A stretch of DNA of 49,424 nt, the filler included, from Bipalium vagum (taxonomy: Eukaryota): assembly GCA_037834085.1 (NCBI GenBank). It is 2 parts of 2 records of this genome, joined end to end, with 100 filler letters (N's around TTAATTAATTAA, not from the genome) between each part and the next. Parts side by side here need not be neighbours in the genome. Positions count along the whole stretch, not along the records: positions 1 to 30,098 come from JBBMKC010006430.1; 1 more part is not named here. One strand, 5' to 3'. Under the pieces are notes generated by a model, which was given only the letters and a program-made list of their open reading frames with translations, ran no database searches and was not told the DNA's origin. How positions within the stretch are numbered: position 1 is the stretch's first letter; every line of letters begins with the position of its first letter. This document shows, piece by piece, positions 3,201 through 26,690 of the stretch. Position numbers and translations under genes: made by a program.

Positions 3201-3541
3201 TCAATTTTTTATTCATTTTACTATAATTATAAATCAAAATAAATGTATTGATATGTTTATTCTAAACGGAACTTACGAATATCAAACATTAGGAGCTTTT
3301 TAAATTTATTTTATATCCATTTTTAAGGATCTTAATATAAACAATAAAACCAGTTGTTATAGTAATCTACAATAGGAGCTTAAAAGTAAGCAAAACAAAA
3401 AAATAAAAATTTATCTTCTAATTTATGAAACACTAATTCAAATTATATTTTTCTCAAGAAGCTTGTAAAGATGAAACAATTTTATTAATGAATCAAATAG
3501 AATTCAGTTCTTAAAATATTACATAATTATATTTTAAACTA

Positions 3542-3711
3542 TTAGGTTGGCAACTAAGTTCGTGCGCTTTTCTAAGGCACCTTGACCTGTTTTTTGCGAG
3601 TAAGTCTTCAGAGTTCTACGAACGTGGCATTATGAATTTATGAATTTTATCAATAAAAATTTATGGTTTTCATTTCTTCTTAAAAGCGCACGAACTTAGT
3701 TGCCAACCCAA
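3542..3711. mobile_element. Mariner-type MITE, 170 bp
   Basis: 30-bp TIRs with one mismatch: TTAGGTTGGCAACTAAGTTCGTGCGCTTTT ... AAAAGCGCACGAACTTAGTTGCCAACCCAA. Flanked by TA on both sides (3540-41, 3712-13). Confidence 0.92.
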
Positions 3712-3923
3712 TACATCGAGATAAAGTAAGAATTGCAAATCGTATAAATTAGACAAGTATTTACAAATGAAATCTTTTATGAAGAAATTATAAAGTGAAA
3801 TAATAAATAAATTGAAACTGACATAATAACCAAAGATGGTTTTGTCGATCATCATAATTACCACCGAGTTTGTATTTATTTTTCAACTTCAATTTTTAAT
3901 TGTTTACAATGTATAAAAACGAA

Positions 3924-3975
3924 TATTACTGACTGATGAAGAGCTGACAAAACGTTCGAAAAATGTTTCATAATA
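3924..3975 (+). ncRNA. Minimal type I hammerhead ribozyme, copy 1 (slightly degenerate)
   Basis: Stem I TATTACTGA/TCA-TAATA; core CTGATGA 3933-39; stem II GAGC/GTTC; GAAA 3958-61; minimal stem III region AAAATGTT, one change from palindromic AACATGTT; predicted GUU cleavage after 3967. Confidence 0.7.
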
Positions 3976-4399
3976 ATAAATGTTTAAGCAGATCTTACTG
4001 TATAGTGATAAAATATGTTTAAGTTAAAAAAAGATATTATATATAAATATATATATATAAATTTGTTAATGTTTAAAATGTTTAATATTTTATAAAATTA
4101 CTTAACTGCATAATGAACAAGCACTATTATTGAACACCGTTTTTTTAGATTGAATAGGATGCTAAATGACATCATTTCCAAGTTAAGTAAATATGAAAAA
4201 TAAATAAATATATTATATATATTCTCAGTTGTTTTATTTTTCAAAAAATTATAGTACGGTTTATTTTAAAAAATTCATTATTATTGTAAAATGATTTATT
4301 TATTTTAATATATTTTATATATTATATTTTTAATATAAAATGTTTTTCACAAGTAATCTGATTATTAATATTTTAGACCTTTACAGTGTATAATATCAA

Positions 4400-4445
4400 A
4401 TTACTGACTGATGATGAGCAGATTTTGTTTAAAACAGGCATCGTT
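4400..4445 (+). ncRNA. Degenerate hammerhead ribozyme, copy 2
   Basis: Same context TTACTGA-CTGATGA (core 4408-14), stem II GAGCA/TGTTT, AAAAC in place of GAAAC. Flanks resemble copy 1 at a 475-bp offset. Confidence 0.5.
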
Positions 4446-5581
4446 GAGTGGTATAACATTTATTATCATTATATACATGGTAAAAATATTTCTTAATTAA
4501 ACGCTTTTCAGCAAACATTCTTAATAGTTAACCATTGTGATTATTTTTTTTTATTTCTTTGTAATTTTACACGTGTGAAGATCTTATTTTTTACAGACCA
4601 TAGTTGGTCAACCGTAATATTTCGTTTAGAGAAATATTAATCAAATAAAACTATATTTTTAATTTTTCATTATATTATTTTTAACTATTTTAAACATTAC
4701 TTTTAATTTTTAAATTTTAAAAAACTTAATTTTGCATAAATATTTATCAAACTTTTAAGGAGATCTAAAAATCTTCTTTTCAATCTCTCAAGAATAATTG
4801 AATTTAAAAGTACTTTTAAAATTAAAAATAACTTATATCATTTTTTCTATCAACTAAAATAGTTTTATAACCAGAAATGGAAACCAGCTTGGAACCGAAC
4901 GGTACATAATGTTAATTTAACAGTATGCATTTCCTATTAAATTTTTGTGTAAATTTGATAACATTTATTTAGTAAAATTAACTGGTACGTAAAGTATCAA
5001 TTTGATTATGTATTATAAACGAATCGAATTAAAAACATAGTGACTCCAATAACGCTAAACAACTAAAACTTAATTTTTTGTACAATAGGTATCTTTACAT
5101 CTCTGAATTAAAGAAAACATTAACAATTCATTAATTTATTATGCTTGCCTTATTTTGATACTTATTGAATATAATATTGTATAACAATTGTTTTAAGTTT
5201 ACCCAAGACATCACTCGACTATGGTTAATTGTGGAAACCCTAGAAAGTGTCAGAATACTTACTTTAATTTGGCAAAAACTTTCGATCTCAGGCGCATCAA
5301 CCGACATTGACAAATCCCAGACTGAACATAAAACTATGAACGATGATCAAGTGGGGAGCATCAAAGAAAACGGGGAAGTTCTGAATAGTCAACAACGAGA
5401 ATCTGGCTTTCAAAAGTTCATTTAATTAGAAAAATCCATGCGAATACTTTTTCAGACAACAGGAAAAGATAAACTTAGCCTATCAACTGCGGATGAAAAG
5501 AACCAAAATGAAAATATGAGTTAAAATTGGATTTGACACCTGGCAAATTTTGGTTTTATTTTTAATTAAACTTCTGTATTT

Positions 5582-5582
<1 letters not shown>

Positions 5583-5657
<75 letters not shown>
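5583..5657. repeat. (TAA)n microsatellite
   Basis: Pure TAA run of about 25 units. Confidence 0.97.
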
Positions 5658-5660
<3 letters not shown>

Positions 5661-5887
5661 CAAATAATAAGAGAAAGACTCACTTTAAAGATTAGCCAAA
5701 AATAAGAAGAGGTTTTTAAGATAATTTTTTTCGGAAACAGTTTTTCGAAGATAATAAGGGTTGCTATTAACAATTTAAGGAAATTTAGAGGATTTTAAAA
5801 ACAATTTTAAGAATTACCCTCATATTCAAGAACTTTAGCAAAATAGTAGATAAAATAAGGATTTTCAGAGCAGCAAAAAGAATCAAG

Positions 5888-6020
5888 ACGTTACTAGAAG
5901 CAAAGTATTACTAAAAGCAAAGCGTTCCTGGAGCCAAAAAGTTACCAGGACTAAAGCCTTACTAGGAGCAAAATGTTAGTAGAGACAAACTGCTATTAAA
6001 ACCAAAGGATTATTAGAAGC
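5888..6020. repeat. Degenerate 17-bp minisatellite, about 8 units
   Basis: Units such as ACGTTACTAGAAGCAAA, GTATTACTAAAAGCAAA, GCGTTCCTGGAGCCAAA, AAGTTACCAGGACTAAA, GCCTTACTAGGAGCAAA. Confidence 0.8.
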
Positions 6021-6581: not shown

Positions 6582-7739
6582 TTAAACCTTGTTCTTGTTA
6601 TATACTGATTTTGATAGTTCCGTTACTTCATAATCATTCATCTTATTTTTTTGGGTCTCTTTGGTTGAATTAGAAAGATAGACTTCCTTACATCTCATCA
6701 TACATAAATTGTGATAGCGAAAATTTTTCATCCGTGCCATATAAACAAACCAGTTAGTTGCTTCCTGGATGAAAAACAGATGCCATCCGATATCACTAAA
6801 ATTATAACTCAGTCTAACTAATTCCGTAGCTCCTTTTATAGTTTGAAAGTACACTGCAAACATATAAGCAACGGTTTGTGGTAATGATCCTAGAACGAAA
6901 ATGATCGACAGAACAACCAGTAACGTACAGGCAGATATTTCCTTTGTAGCACTTCCAACGTGATTGCATAACTCCTTTCTCAGTTCTTGGGCGTTTTTCA
7001 ATTTTAAAAGAAGAGACAAGTTAACGGTCACAATGGCAACTGTTTGGGCGAAACCACAATTAGAAAACAAAACATGACAAAGTTGGCCAATCATTACCAA
7101 ATTTGAGTTGTCTATCCAACAAATCATACGTTTGTCTATGTTCATATGTAGATTTATAATAATACCAAAAGGTATTACTATTATTCCACTGACAACCGTT
7201 GTAATTGCTATCAAAGTCCAAGCAAATGTTTTACCTTTTTTACTATACTTCAATGGTTTGTAGATGGATAAACATCGATCCACACTTGTCAATAGAAATA
7301 GGTTCACCGCCAATGTTGAAGCGAATGAATAAATATAACGATGAACCTTACAGGCATTGTTACTTTCATTGAAAGTGAAAAAAAATGAATTTCCTTCTGT
7401 CATGTATGGTAAACCTTTAGCTGGAAATATCCATAACCATCCGAAAGATATTAGACAAAAATTATCCGCTAACGCCAGGGCTGATAAATAGATTATCTGC
7501 CTTGTTCTGTATTTCGGTGGATATCTTATCAGGAAAATGTAACATATCAAAAAATTGGACAATATTCCAAATGTCCCAACAAATGGGTATACATATCCCG
7601 AAAGGATCCCTAAAACATGACTTGTTGCACAGCTGGCTAATCTTTGCATATTCTTTTCCGTTCCGTTTGTTTCACAAGGGATTAAAAGATCCCATGGTGT
7701 ATCAATAAAAGGCCATTTATTAAATTTTTCTAAATACAT
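6582..7739 (-). CDS. Intronless class A (rhodopsin-like) orphan GPCR, 385 aa, resembling flatworm-expanded peptide/chemoreceptor-like families
   Basis: Seven hydrophobic segments: TM1 GILSN, TM2 LSALALAD, Cys at the top of TM3, DRC in place of DRY, TM4 Trp and Pro, ECL2 Cys (MICW), TM6 LP, TM7 NWFVY followed by NFR. N-glycosylation sequon NGT in the N-terminus. Confidence 0.93.
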   Translation of the reverse strand: MYLEKFNKWPFIDTPWDLLIPCETNGTEKNMQRLASCATSHVLGILSGYVYPFVGTFGILSNFLICYIFLIRYPPKYRTRQIIYLSALALADNFCLISFGWLWIFPAKGLPYMTEGNSFFFTFNESNNACKVHRYIYSFASTLAVNLFLLTSVDRCLSIYKPLKYSKKGKTFAWTLIAITTVVSGIIVIPFGIIINLHMNIDKRMICWIDNSNLVMIGQLCHVLFSNCGFAQTVAIVTVNLSLLLKLKNAQELRKELCNHVGSATKEISACTLLVVLSIIFVLGSLPQTVAYMFAVYFQTIKGATELVRLSYNFSDIGWHLFFIQEATNWFVYMARMKNFRYHNLCMMRCKEVYLSNSTKETQKNKMNDYEVTELSKSVYNKNKV

Positions 7740-11379: not shown

Positions 11380-12058
11380 ATTGACAACTCCATTCAGATA
11401 AAAATGGGCTTCATCGCTCATTATCAGATTGTTCAAAAAGGTGGTATTATCTCTTGCTAACTTGTGAAAATGAATAACATAATTCAAACGGACAGTATTG
11501 TCTGATGGGAGAAGAACTTAAGCTGATTGGATTTTATAAGGGAACGTTTTTAAGTCCTTTTCCAAAATTGTTTGAAGTGTATTTCTGCCAATAGCAACCT
11601 GAGCAGACCGACGACGTACAGAAGTTGTTGGATGTTCTTAAACGATTTGCCGCATAGATTCAACCATCAATCCAGTACGCACAGTTTTCCCTGGACCCTT
11701 CTTCGTAAGATCTGCAACAGATCCAGTTTCTTCAAATCTTTTAATTAAATTTCTAATCATGTTGTCACTGGGAGCTTCTTTAACATTAAGTTGTTTTCGG
11801 CAGTTTCTCTGCGCTTGAGTGATTGATTTTCTATTTGAGTAGAAAAATTCAACAATTTTCACTTTATTATTATTCTTTTATTTGAAAATCTTAACTGCAA
11901 ATACTGAAATATTGATTAAGTTTAAATAATAACTATAACAACAACTTTGTATTATAAACTCCAATAAATATATATTCATAAAAATTCCAATAACATTTCA
12001 TATCAAAACTTTTGTAAGTTATTTTAGATCATCCTTCAGTCTTCCAGTGCACATCCTG
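11380..12058 (-). mobile_element. 5' half of a DD41D (rosa/Visitor-like) Tc1/mariner element
   Basis: HTH KIVEFFYSNRKSITQAQR..PSDNMIRNLIKRFEETGSVAD, SDEAHF near 11405-11420, and a TA-CAGGATGTG terminus at 12058-60. Confidence 0.8.
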
Positions 12059-14189: not shown

Positions 14190-15965
14190 GTGAGTAATAG
14201 ATGTGATACAGGATGGGTGAATATGGTCAGCGAAAATCAAAATGCGATAATATCTTACAATGTGATGCAGGGGAGGCCGAGTGTGACAGTAATGATACAA
14301 GAGTTGAGATTGGAATGCTTATTAGATACAGGGGCCAGAATTAATATAATGAGCAGTAATTTAGCTACAAGATTGCGTAATATTCAAATTAGAAAATGCG
14401 AAGACAGATTACGGTGTGCAAATGACAGCGCATTAGAAACTATGGGAAAACTGGCAGTAAATGTCGTAATAGAAGGCAGACAAGCAGAAATTAATTTTAT
14501 TGTGGTAAAAAATGTTACTCCTGAATTGATAGGAGGTGTAGAATTACAACGACAGTTTGGTTTTGTATTAAAGCAAGAAAACTTTATTTCGAAAGTACAG
14601 ATAGACAAAATAGAACACAGAGAAAAACCATTTATTTGCAATATTGAGGCAAAATTTGGGAGACAAATAAACATTGGAGTACGATAACATAGAACATTAA
14701 CAGCATTGAAAATAGAACGAAAGTCACAGATAGGTAAATTTATCCAAGAAAATGAAGACGCCTTTATGGCTGATAAGTGGGACATCGGATGTACTCATTT
14801 AGCTCGGCATAACATAAAAACAACGGGTAATTCTATTAATCTTAAGCCATTTAGACAGCCGATGAATTTAGAAGACAAGATCAATGAAGCAATAACCTTC
14901 ATAAGAATGACATAATTAGGAAATGTCAATCACCGTGGAATACGCCTTTAATATGTGTGTGGAAAAAAGATAAGCAGGAAATCAGGTTATGCTTTGATTT
15001 CCGACAGCTGAATGCAATAACAGAGAGACCAGCTTTCCCAATGCCAAATGTTGATGAAATTATAGATCAATTAAGTGGGTCAAAATATTTTAGTTCAATT
15101 GATTTAGGAAACGCCTATTACCAAGTAGAATTGGATGAAGAGTAAAAAAAAAGACGGCCTTTTCAACAATAACAGGTCAATATTGTTTTAATCGCATCGC
15201 TGCTCCAGGAACGTTTCAAAGGATTATGAATAAAGTAGTTGGTGGTTTGATAGGAACAATTGTTTATCTGGATGATATCTTGGTATTCTCAGACAACATC
15301 GAACAACATTACACAAGGCTAGATAGGGTATTAAAAAAAAATAAAAAAAGCCGGATTGTTAGTGAACCCTGAAAAATGCCAGTCTTTAAAAGAAGAAGTA
15401 AAATTCTTGGGACACGTTATAAATCAAAAAGGGATTAAGACGGATCCACAGAAGATAGAAGCCATTAGATCTTTCAACAAACCAAACTGCATAAAAGGTC
15501 TACGAAGTTTCCTAGGAATATGCAAATATTATAAGAAATTCATCAAGGATTATGCAAGAAAAGCTGGGGCTTTGGAACGCATGTGTGGAATGAAATTGCA
15601 TTTCTGAATTTGAAAAAGGCCCTGATGTCAAGTCCAATACTGTGCTTTCCAGATCTAAGAAAAGACTTTATCGCAGATGGATAATAATGGTAAAGAACGG
15701 GTAGTAGCGTATGGATCTCCCACATTGAATAGCCACGAAAAGGGTTATTGCGTGACCAGAAAAGAGTTACTTGCTATTTACTATTTTTGTAAGCACTTTA
15801 ATCATTTTTTATACGGCAGGAAATTTTTGTTGCGAACAGACCACAAGGCTATTACATTTATGATAAGCACAAAGAAGCCAATCACATCCCAGTTCCAAAC
15901 GTGGATCAATTATTTGAGCAGCTTAGATATTCAATTAGAGTACCGTAAAGGAACAGACCACACCA
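14190..15965 (+). pseudogene. Ty3/gypsy pol remnant: aspartic protease, RT and RNase H; integrase deleted
   Basis: LLDTGA protease motif; SPWNTP, RLCFDFRQLN, SIDLGNAYYQV, VYLDDI (~15262-15280), LRSFLG, KELLAI, LRTDHKAI. Several stops and frameshifts. Confidence 0.93.
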
Positions 15966-16070
15966 GGACACCAACCAGCGGACGAGGTCTCGGAAGTAGA
16001 ATTGTAAAGGAATTGCATGGAAATGGAAGTAAAGAGACTCGGGGCGGTTAAGGGTATGGATGTGAGGTTT

Positions 16071-20394: not shown

Positions 20395-21322
20395 CATTTT
20401 GATAACTATTTCGCGTCACTACAATACAGGTGAAAAATATTTATCACAATCGATCCGACTGTCAACGAAAAAAACAAATAGAAGTGACGATAAGATATTT
20501 ACAATAAATACTGCAAGCCAATTCAAACCTGCTTCTGATATCAGAGCTGAAATAATTGAAAGGTTATCTTTGCCTATTTCTTTGTCAACCATTCAACGAC
20601 GACTAGGAGAAAAAGGCATTTTTTGATGTATTTATTTAGCGACAAAACCACTTCTTCTTGAGATAATATTAGTAAAAGTTTAGAATTTGCTATTAACTAT
20701 AAAGTTTGGACAATCGGTCAGTGGAAATCTGTGTTATTTACAGATGAATCAAAATTTGAACTTTTTGGAAGTCTTCGTCGATAATTAGTTAGAAGAAAAT
20801 TAATCAAAGATATAAACCCCAGTGTATTTTACCTTACATTAAGACATGGAGGTGGTTTAGTAATGATATGGGGTTGTTTTGCTTATGCTGGAGTTGGTGC
20901 ATTAGTGAAAATTGATGGCATCATGAAGAAAAACCAATATCATCGCATTCTTCAGCAATACGTAATCCTATCCGGAATTGACTTAATTGGCCAAGGTTTC
21001 ACTTTACAAGATGACAACTATTCGAAACACACTTCTAAGCTGTGTTATAATTATTTAATGAAAAAAGAAGAAGATGCAATACTTCAAATTTTAAAGTGAC
21101 CGCGCACAATCGCCAGATTTTTGTCCTGTCGAGTTACTTTGAGATGAGTTTGACCTTCAAGTAAGAAATATGCGAATAAACAGCCAAATAGATATGAAGA
21201 ATTGCTTAGATGATGCTTGGAACAATATAAGTGTAGAAAAACTATATAAACCTCTGGAGAGAATAGCTAAAAGATGCATCGCCGTGATCAAAGTAAAAGG
21301 TGATTACATCAATGAAAATTAA
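20395..21322 (+). mobile_element. Decayed Tc1 (DD34E) transposase
   Basis: STIQRRL, WKSVLFTDESKFELFGS, HGGGLVMIWGCF, QDDNYSKHTS, QSPDFCPVE. Stops and frameshifts present. Confidence 0.9.
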
Positions 21323-25339: not shown

Positions 25340-26690
25340 TATATAAACTCTAACTCCCTTCTTGCTGAAGACTGTTGCTACTTCTTTCAATTCTTCTTGT
25401 TTAAGTGCTGTTTGGACCCTTCAATTAGATTTAATGTGAAGATATTAATTTTGTAATCTGGCAAGGTCCCTCATACTGGAAATCTGTCTTTCGATTCTGA
25501 GGTTGACTAATACTTTATAAAACTCTCCAGTCTTATTCATGTAGGCCACCTCAATTAGGACTTGTACCATTAAATGTGAAATTCTTTTAAGAATCAAAAT
25601 GTCTTTAGTGCGGGTCTGATCTATTTTAAGTTTTGCACAGATAATAAAAGTTTTCAAGTTGTATTGATCGAGCTCCACATTGACGGCAGAAATATAGATT
25701 CTTTAGATAATGGAATATTTTCTTAGTTCCAAAATGACACAATTCTGTTTGAACGTCTTTCATAAATTCGTCGACAAATCCTTTTGGAACTGTAATAAAA
25801 TCCCATTCATTTTTTCTTAACACTAGTAACTTGTCCATCACATATAGGTTATTTCTTCATTGATAAATTTACTATTTTGAACTTTTTCCTGTAGATTCCT
25901 CCTTCTATCCGCGAATCATAGTATCATATCCGCAGTAGAAATATGGACCATCTGTTTTGACCGAATTCTTATCAACTTTCCATTTACAATATGAGATACA
26001 TTAATGTACCTAGTTTTCGGTTTCTCTACCTTAGCTCCCTCATATCTAATTTGATATTGCACACACAAAGTATATCCAATTCTGGACATTCCATCAGAAT
26101 TAGTATATTCCTCCCCTTTCCTATATATCAAATCAAAATCGAATTTAGATAAATTCTCTAACCATGTCTGAAATTGTGGGTTGATTGGATTTTTCGTCGT
26201 GTTCTTGCGATGAAGTGTTCGCCATACAAATATTGATTAAAATGCATGGCAAAATTCGTTTAATACCAGTAATTATTTTCTCATTAAACAATAGTCAAGC
26301 TCGTGTGATGAGAAGTGTCTTGAACCACGTTTGATATCTGCGTCTCTCCCCTCTTCAGTGATTTGACTCAAAACAGCACCAATCACACTAAAACTAGCGT
26401 CCGTGTCCCAAACAAATTCATTATCCTTCCTCGACAAATCAAAAATTGGAGCCTGGCATAATTTATCCTTCAATTCCTGAAAACTCTTCCTATATTGATC
26501 TGTTCATTTTAGTTTTTCTCTTCACCAGAAAGTGGCACACAGTAAGAACGCAATATCCGCATTTTTCGATTAAACGTCTATAATAATAATTTGTTAACCC
26601 TAGAAAAGATCTCAATTAAGGAACACAGCCCGGAGTTTCCATATTCATTATCTCTTCAATATATTTTTGTTGGTTTTTTGATTCGTCTAC
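25340..26690 (-). pseudogene. Ty3/gypsy pol remnant (RT end, RNase H, integrase zinc finger)
   Basis: LRSFLGLTNYY, DTDASFSVIGAVLSQ, YRKGEEYTNSDGMSR, HFGTKK followed by C..CAK. Fragmented. Confidence 0.87.

What the first reader, a model, noticed from the sequence alone, without database searches (positions are those of the whole stretch)
3900..4520. Tandem minimal hammerhead ribozymes 475 bp apart: Penelope pLTR or retrozyme-like unit
Seen: two direct-repeat blocks TTTACA(A/G)TGTATAA..TTACTGA-CTGATGA-N-GAGC..GTT(C/T)-(G/A)AAA, with cores at 3933 and 4408 and further similarity ~70 nt downstream. The defects are complementary: copy 1 keeps CGAAA and GUU plus stem I, copy 2 keeps the C of GAAAC. 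The consensus gives a palindromic stem III (AACAUGUU). Established: minimal type I hammerheads with palindromic stem III occur in Penelope-like pLTRs and tandem retrozymes and cleave as dimers. Inference: double cleavage would release a ~475-nt monomer that could circularise. Upstream sequence (YLQMKSF, ~3758-80) weakly resembles a GIY-YIG C-terminus.
Basis: partly seen in the sequence, partly recalled or inferred. Interest (0 to 1): 0.8.

Follow-up and report, generated by a model that had tools for sequence, protein, structure and literature searches.

The report
Decayed Penelope retrotransposon tails with hammerheads
The two hammerhead-like blocks are worn-out 3' end fragments of an old, very abundant Penelope-like retrotransposon whose tail carries the minimal hammerhead ribozyme typical of that class; they are not a working tandem ribozyme unit, so the locus itself is ordinary.

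Summary
The two blocks are real: the cores sit at 3933 and 4408, 475 nt apart. Block 1 (3895 to about 4035-4088) belongs to a dispersed repeat family. In other contigs that family lies directly after an RVT_1 then GIY-YIG reading frame, so it is the 3' tail of an endonuclease-encoding Penelope-like element (PLE).

The family consensus and four natural copies meet every published hallmark of a metazoan PLE minimal hammerhead (min-HHR):
- the CUGANGA core;
- one extra A after position 9;
- a G10.1-C11.1 closing pair on a 5-bp helix II;
- GAAA;
- the palindrome ACAUGU, then U as the cleavage nucleotide.

A strict descriptor matched 9 of 200,000 shuffled tails. At least six other PLE tails in this genome carry the same architecture with different helix II sequences.

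In the window, copy 1 keeps all core nucleotides but has C15.2 changed to A, which breaks helix III. Copy 2 is a unique fragment of about 68 nt with changes at C11.1, G12 and U16.1. The spacer is not part of the family and the window holds no PLE protein remnant.

The claim of a 475-nt self-cleaving, circularising unit is not supported. This is a new member of a known kind, of low interest.

The parts
3895..4088 (+). Copy 1: a 5'-truncated 3' tail of a Penelope-like element. It is confident for 3895-4035 and probably continues to about 4088, across a TA microsatellite at 4037-4060.
   Evidence: A family HMM built without this copy gives E 2.3e-30. BLAST to 11 other copies gives 72-83% identity. 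It is 84% identical to the family majority over 96 columns. I judged the 3' end by eye against the family end motif.
3929..3971 (+). The hammerhead of copy 1:
- stem I 5' strand, 3929-3932
- CUGAUGA, 3933-3939
- extra A, 3940
- helix II GAGC/GUUC with a 9-nt loop, 3941-3957
- GAAA, 3958-3961
- degenerate helix III AAUGU, 3962-3966 (C15.2 to A at 3962)
- H17 = U at 3967, so the predicted cut falls between 3967 and 3968
- stem I 3' strand, 3968-3971
   Evidence: Read directly. It passes the loose descriptor but fails the palindrome test. All 11 core nucleotides are present.
4089..4379 (.). Spacer between the two copies. It is not part of the repeat family.
   Evidence: The family HMM gives no hit here. 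In the genome there are only short, low-complexity matches of 69-80% identity.
4380..4447 (+). Copy 2: a short decayed fragment of the same tail, on the same strand. The core CUGAUGA is at 4408-4414. C11.1 is U (4430), G12 is A (4431), the loop 3 U is G (4437) and U16.1 is C (4439).
   Evidence: The family HMM aligns 4385-4417 with E 0.013. A global alignment to the family majority reaches about 4447. The fragment is unique in the genome.

Best explanation
Both blocks are dead fragments of the 3' untranslated tail of an old, very abundant endonuclease-encoding Penelope-like retrotransposon (PLE). In that family the tail runs: stop codon of the RT/GIY-YIG frame, about 110 nt, a minimal type I hammerhead of about 65 nt, then about 90-95 nt to the 3' end of insertions.

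The hammerhead has no hairpin helix III. Instead it has a short palindrome, so two copies on one multimeric transcript, or on two transcripts, must pair to build helix III before cutting after the U that follows ACAUGU. That is the proposed way PLE RNAs are trimmed out of longer transcripts.

Copy 1 is a heavily 5'-truncated insertion, as target-primed reverse transcription often leaves. It keeps the catalytic core but has lost the C15.2-G16.2 pair. Copy 2 is a more eroded fragment that lacks catalytic G12 and U16.1. Neither is expected to cleave, alone or together.

Shown: family membership, linkage to RT and GIY-YIG, the motif architecture and the defects. Inferred: ribozyme activity of intact family members, the dimer mechanism, and why the two copies lie close together.
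For: - Copy 1 matches a dispersed family. The core pattern has 70 copies against 0 for the control. A downstream anchor has 208 copies against 2 for the control.
- The family HMM hits directly after, and overlapping, GIY-YIG frame ends: L078 E 6e-44, plus L083, L089, L091 and L093-L098.
- Pfam finds RVT_1 (E 1e-11) upstream of GIY-YIG (E 4e-8).
- The protein pieces have more than 3,300 first-look candidates. All 150 scored were at E<1e-33, and open frames reach at most 391 aa.
- The strict min-HHR descriptor is met by the family majority and by natural copies L020, L021, L040 and L091. It matched 9 of 200,000 shuffled tails.
- Six other PLE tails in this genome carry min-HHRs on the sense strand, 150-515 nt after the frame end. 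All have an extra A after position 9 and a G10.1-C11.1 pair, helix II differs in sequence while still pairing, and some have the U3-A8 core variant.
- These are the hallmarks listed by Cervera and De la Pena 2014 (PMC4209133), including mostly single dispersed motifs and pairs on opposite strands 100-700 bp apart. Such pairs are seen here in L021/L057, L036, L045 and L067.
- The C11.1-G12 step decays as a CpG would: 21 CG, 11 TG, 4 CA, 1 TA.
Against: - No Rfam hammerhead model matches the window, 20 family loci or an intact copy. A GC-rich PLE min-HHR of the published type is missed too, so this negative carries little weight.
- Within the family there is no compensatory covariation, and in anchor-selected copies the core is no better kept than the flanks. 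That is expected for dead copies, but it gives no positive support.
- Helix II is almost all A-U.
- No RNA data exist to show cleavage.
- I recovered no full-length copy with a direct upstream pLTR.
- Chance does not explain two same-strand fragments 475 nt apart in a 440-Mb genome, and this reading does not fully explain it either.
Confidence: 0.85

Rival explanations
1. The pair is what remains of one partial-tandem (pLTR-type) PLE insertion or of a retrozyme-like non-autonomous dimer: a truncated upstream tail followed by a short downstream unit, eroded later.
For: - Same strand and close spacing. At a few hundred to a few thousand copies per 440 Mb, a second copy within 500 nt is unlikely by chance.
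- Both copies share subfamily states: C in AUUACUGA, G in GAGC, U at N7.
- PLEs are known to insert as partial tandems and into their own tails (PMC4209133, PMC11167929).
Against: - The 290-nt spacer does not match the 285 nt that precede the core in the family, nor any PLE protein.
- Copy 2 is far more eroded than copy 1 (about 73% against 84% identity, and only 68 nt), which does not fit a single event.
- Copy 2 keeps consensus states that copy 1 has lost, so it is not a local duplicate of copy 1.
- No direct pairs appear in about 70 other loci.
Confidence: 0.1
2. The two motifs form a functional tandem hammerhead pair that releases a 475-nt RNA able to circularise.
For: Only the spacing, and the fact that copy 1 keeps all core nucleotides.
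Against: - Copy 2 lacks G12 and U16.1.
- Helix III cannot form in either copy or between them.
- The predicted homodimer gain is -4.7 kcal/mol for copy 1, against -12 to -14 for intact copies.
- The unit is not repeated anywhere.
Confidence: 0.02
3. The hammerhead look of the PLE tail is incidental. The conserved element is instead the 12-nt perfect palindrome GAAACAUGUUUC or nearby sequence, serving as a protein-binding or reverse-transcription signal.
For: - The palindrome extends beyond what helix III needs and dominates the predicted dimer fold.
- In the Anolis PLE the hammerhead was dispensable for insertion in vitro, and no reads ended at its cut site (PMC11167929).
- There is no within-family covariation.
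Against: - All four independent hallmarks of PLE min-HHRs are present.
- The descriptor is rare in shuffles.
- The same architecture with different helix II sequences recurs in other PLE families of the genome, which lack the long palindrome.
Confidence: 0.08

Closest known systems
Minimal hammerheads (min-HHR) of metazoan Penelope-like elements (Cervera and De la Pena 2014, PMC4209133)
   Same: - Type I topology, with no hairpin helix III.
[quoted passage not shown]
- A G10.1-C11.1 pair.
- Palindromic 15.2-16.2 and a short helix I.
- Location in the PLE untranslated repeat region.
- Mostly single dispersed copies from truncated elements, with occasional pairs on opposite strands.
   Different: Helix II is short (5 bp, four of them A-U) with a 7-10 nt A-rich loop, rather than the 6-8 bp GC-rich helices described. 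The palindrome is 6 nt and is embedded in a 12-nt perfect palindrome.
Drosophila virilis Penelope hammerhead variant (same paper)
   Same: [quoted passage not shown]
   Different: The D. virilis motif has a bulge inside helix II and sits at an intron end. Its copies are nearly identical (a recent invasion), whereas this family is old and diverged (median 81% identity to the majority).
Animal non-LTR retrozymes (tandem type I hammerhead repeats giving circular RNAs; bioRxiv 10.64898/2026.07.22.740005 argues they derive from PLE pLTRs)
   Same: They derive from the PLE tail, carry a type I hammerhead that needs a partner, and have units of a few hundred nt.
   Different: Retrozymes are head-to-tail arrays of the same unit with intact ribozymes. 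Here the spacer is unrelated, copy 2 is a 68-nt fragment and both ribozymes are defective.
Poseidon element of Anolis carolinensis (PAc; PMC11167929)
   Same: A canonical RT plus C-terminal GIY-YIG PLE with a hammerhead in the region between reading frames. Insertions end at an internal 'tail' site.
   Different: In PAc the hammerhead overlaps the start of the reading frame and needs the protein to cleave. Here it lies about 110 nt after the stop codon, and the position of the next frame start is unknown.

Membership tests
Endonuclease-encoding Penelope-like element (PLE) | Reverse transcriptase domain | tested here: met
   RVT_1 at E 1e-11 in L098:1414-1695 and L096:2451-3044, and a YVDD motif in L097. 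This holds for family members. The window has no remnant.
Endonuclease-encoding Penelope-like element (PLE) | GIY-YIG endonuclease C-terminal to the RT, in the same frame direction | tested here: met
   PF01541 at E 4e-8 in L078 and E 1e-4 in L095, downstream of the RT pieces and overlapped by the 5' part of the tail family.
Endonuclease-encoding Penelope-like element (PLE) | Flanking repeats (pLTR) from partial tandem or inverted copies, with frequent 5' truncation | tested here: inconclusive
   5' truncation at many different points is seen, and head-to-head inverted pairs occur in 5 of about 60 loci. No direct pLTR pair was found. The longest copy, L096, has no upstream tail. The assembly is very fragmented.
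Endonuclease-encoding Penelope-like element (PLE) | RT groups with telomerase-like PLE RTs in a phylogeny | not tested
   Only broken RT pieces were recovered, and no tree was built.
PLE minimal hammerhead (min-HHR) | Core CUGANGA ... GAAA, with U16.1 and H17 | tested here: met
   Met in the family majority and in 14 of 43 distinct copies, including window copy 1. Not met in window copy 2, where G12 is A and U16.1 is C.
PLE minimal hammerhead (min-HHR) | One unpaired nucleotide between A9 and 10.1, and a G10.1-C11.1 closing pair | tested here: met
   The extra A is present in 39 of 43 copies. G-C is found in 22 and G-U in 12, the latter from CpG decay. Copy 1 has both features. Copy 2 has an extra U and a G-U pair.
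PLE minimal hammerhead (min-HHR) | Palindromic 15.2-16.2 and loop 3, allowing a dimeric helix III | tested here: met
   ACAUGU is present in the majority and in L020, L021, L040 and L091. It is not met in either window copy.
PLE minimal hammerhead (min-HHR) | Helices supported by compensatory changes | tested here: inconclusive
   There are none within the family. Across six other PLE tails of the genome, helix II differs in sequence while keeping its pairing.
PLE minimal hammerhead (min-HHR) | Self-cleavage | not testable with these tools
   No RNA run is available for this organism, and there is no bench.
Non-LTR retrozyme (tandem hammerhead repeat giving circular RNA) | Head-to-tail repeats of one unit, each with an intact ribozyme | tested here: not met
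   The spacer is not repeated and not part of the family, copy 2 is unique and defective, and no direct pairs occur in other loci.
Rfam hammerhead families (covariance models) | Score at or near the gathering threshold | tested here: not met
   No hit at E<=10 in the window, in 20 loci or in an intact copy. The control PLE min-HHR in L084 is missed as well, so the models do not cover this class.

The most novel reading that the evidence does not exclude
This PLE family's hammerhead is an obligate-dimer ribozyme with a built-in switch. The 12-nt perfect palindrome GAAACAUGUUUC covers the catalytic GAAA, helix III and the cleavage site. Two copies can therefore either form the active double hammerhead or lock each other into an inert 12-bp duplex. 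On this reading, the same-strand pair in the window is the remnant of a multimeric (tandem) insertion made from such RNA.
Probability: 0.07. Interest if true: 0.45.

Novelty: new member of a known kind. Interest (0 to 1): 0.2.

Why it matters
It matters little for this locus, which holds two dead transposon fragments in AT-rich intergenic DNA.

For the genome it is useful annotation. One PLE family with thousands of fragments, and several other PLE families, all carry minimal hammerheads, some with the U3-A8 core variant. That extends the published picture that these ribozymes are a fixed module of PLE tails. The A-U-rich helix II and the 12-nt palindrome widen the known sequence range slightly, and they show why covariance models in Rfam miss the class.

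Tried and rejected
- **Rfam scans.** I ran the gathering threshold on the piece, E<=10 on 3700-4700, E<=10 on 20 family loci, on an intact copy and on a GC-rich control. None gave a hammerhead hit. The control shows the models do not cover min-HHRs, so I did not use these negatives against the reading.
- **C/D-box snoRNA idea.** The weak SNORD44 and snoR69Y hits (E 2.4-8.6) were rejected. They are far below gathering, and the same bases are explained by the family.
- **MITE or foldback idea.** A few loci have inverted ends. I rejected this once the 5' part of the family proved to be the end of a GIY-YIG frame.
- **tRNA-SINE idea.** GTTCGAAAC resembles a B box, but its position deep in the element and the PLE linkage rule this out.
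- **PLE protein remnants in the window.** tblastn with 60 frames from PLE loci found nothing below E 0.03, and no GIY-YIG query hit 3300-3900 or 4500-5900.
- **Expression and cleavage test.** Only one run holds the stretch, it is not RNA, and the organism is coded.
- **Organism.** Not identified beyond a metazoan. The nearest Atlas clusters of the PLE endonuclease are mostly from arthropods.
- **The big protein searches.** Not used, because they were not needed.

Full report
**Observation.** The window piece is contig C6430 of a 440-Mb, very fragmented, AT-rich animal genome. CTGATGA stands at 3933-3939 and 4408-4414. The repeat finder reports a 23-nt direct pair 475 nt apart. The 17-mer ACTGACTGATGANGAGC occurs exactly twice, against none in 100 shuffles. 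A pairwise alignment shows about 45 shared positions (3903-3947 against 4380-4422) and then only AT-rich noise. So the two blocks are real and not chance, but the similarity is short.

**What block 1 is.**
- A genome search with 3890-3965 found 11 other copies at 78-93% identity.
- A 29-nt pattern over the core found 70 copies against 0 for the reversed control.
- A 25-nt anchor 50 nt downstream found 208 against 2.
- Alignment of about 30 loci gave a family of roughly 375 nt whose best-kept part is the last 150 nt.
- An HMM built without the window's copy hits window 3827-4035 with E 2.3e-30, reliably from 3895.
- Many copies are cut off at different 5' points. A few form head-to-head inverted pairs, and none of about 70 loci shows a second core (up to 5 mismatches) in the same orientation within 1.5 kb.

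**Link to a Penelope-like element.**
- A scan of the genome for GIY-YIG domains returned 53 places, many inside open frames of 400-1,080 aa.
- The tail HMM hits four of those loci. In L078 (E 6e-44) its first 130 positions overlap the end of the GIY-YIG frame.
- The layout in L078 is: stop codon, 108 nt, core, about 91 nt from the predicted cut to the element's 3' end.
- More copies fetched by place (L093-L098) show the same order, and upstream frame pieces score as RVT_1 (E 1e-11) with a YVDD motif.
- Protein pieces of this family have more than 3,300 first-look candidates. All 150 scored were below E 1e-33, identities were 47-100%, and no open frame exceeded 391 aa.
- This is therefore an old, decayed, very abundant PLE with RT followed by a C-terminal GIY-YIG endonuclease. 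The repeat family is its 3' tail.

**The hammerhead.** The family majority reads: helix I strand AUGA, CUGA(U/A)GA, one extra A, helix II GAACU/AGUUC around a 7-nt loop, GAAA, the palindrome ACAUGU, U as the cleavage nucleotide, then UCAU pairing back to helix I. Cervera and De la Pena (PMC4209133) list four features that emerged beyond their search descriptor for metazoan PLE min-HHRs:
- consensus families within a genome;
- a conserved G10.1-C11.1 pair;
- palindromic 15.2-16.2 with loop 3.

All four are present here. A strict descriptor encoding them is met by the majority sequence and by natural copies L020, L021, L040 and L091. It was met by 9 of 200,000 composition-matched shuffles of a 231-nt tail.

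Independent support comes from other PLE families of the same genome. Six further tails carry min-HHRs on the sense strand, 150-515 nt after the frame end. Each has an extra A and a G-C closing pair, and helix II differs in sequence while keeping its pairing. Four have the U3-A8 core variant that the same paper described in Schistosoma.

**Limits of that evidence.**
- Within the family there is no compensatory change. In copies chosen by the downstream anchor, the core (73% kept) is no better preserved than the flanks (80-84%). That is what dead copies should show, and it argues neither way.
- Position 7, the free position of the core, is the most variable core column: 23 U, 16 A.
- The C11.1-G12 step decays as a CpG would.
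- Rfam models find nothing. They also miss the GC-rich control, so the negative says little.
- No RNA run exists for this organism, so cleavage is inferred, not shown.

**The window's two copies.**
- Copy 1 keeps all eleven core nucleotides, the extra A, a 4-bp helix II (one G-U pair) and 3 bp of helix I. Position 3962 is A where the family has C, so the C15.2-G16.2 pair and the palindrome are lost.
- Its predicted homodimer gain is -4.7 kcal/mol, against -12 to -14 for intact copies.
- Copy 2 aligns to the family only at 4385-4417 by HMM (E 0.013) and to about 4447 by global alignment.
- Copy 2 has U for C11.1, A for G12, G in loop 3 and C for U16.1, and nothing like it exists elsewhere in the genome.
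- Copy 2 keeps consensus states that copy 1 has lost, so it is not a local duplicate of copy 1.
- The spacer 4089-4379 matches neither the family nor any real repeat.
- tblastn with PLE frames finds no significant PLE protein remnant in the window, including at the YLQMKSF codons.

**Mechanism.** By analogy with published PLEs, intact members would be transcribed as more-than-unit RNAs. Two hammerheads pair through the palindrome to form helix III and cut after the U (PMC4209133). In the one PLE studied biochemically, the ribozyme needed the element's protein and was not required for insertion in vitro, and reverse transcription started at an internal site that defines the tail (PMC11167929). 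Severe 5' truncation during target-primed reverse transcription explains tail-only copies such as copy 1. Why two fragments lie 475 nt apart on the same strand is not settled. PLEs insert preferentially into AT-rich DNA and into their own tails, which would favour nearby independent insertions. A single old partial-tandem event is the main rival (about 0.1).

**Verdict.** The functional inference, a 475-nt self-cleaving and circularising unit, does not hold. This is a new member of a known kind, and the locus itself is ordinary.

**Constraints met.**
- The majority sequence I used covers only the short non-coding tail of a retrotransposon. I built no full-length or repaired element.

Noticed in passing
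window 3540-3713: A 174-bp mariner-type miniature element. It has 32-nt terminal inverted repeats, 97% complementary, that begin TTAGGTTGGCAAC, flanked by TA on both sides.
   Followed up: partly
window 6582-7739 (-): An intronless 385-aa rhodopsin-family receptor frame (7tm_1, E 1.4e-13). Similar intronless 7TM frames lie next to several family loci (L003, L007).
   Followed up: partly
window 14190-16051 (+) and 25445-26131 (-): Pieces of LTR-retrotransposon polyprotein: an aspartyl protease (E 2e-6) and an RT-linked RNase H (E 3e-21). Tc1/mariner-like transposase fragments lie at 2148-2459, 11638-11862 and 20399-21099.
   Followed up: partly
L016:356-469 (-) (same place in L006 and L047): An Rfam potassium-channel RNA editing signal above gathering (66.8 bits, E 2e-11), inside a Shaker-like channel frame.
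   Followed up: no
L020:1481-1543, L021:1481-1543, L091:1282-1347, L040:1487-1549: In intact family copies, GAAACAUGUUUC is a perfect 12-nt palindrome covering GAAA, helix III and the first two bases of helix I. The other PLE families of the genome lack this extension.
   Followed up: partly
contigs C195782, C190271, C155211 (L074, L079, L085): Pairs of other PLE copies lie tail-to-tail (convergent) 1-1.5 kb apart, each with its own min-HHR. Several of these have open frames of 500-1,080 aa, so other PLE families here may be younger.
   Followed up: no
L097:3140-3851: One family copy has about 220 nt inserted or duplicated inside the tail (HMM positions 138-215 occur twice).
   Followed up: no
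window 4037-4060: A TA microsatellite interrupts the end of copy 1's tail.
   Followed up: no
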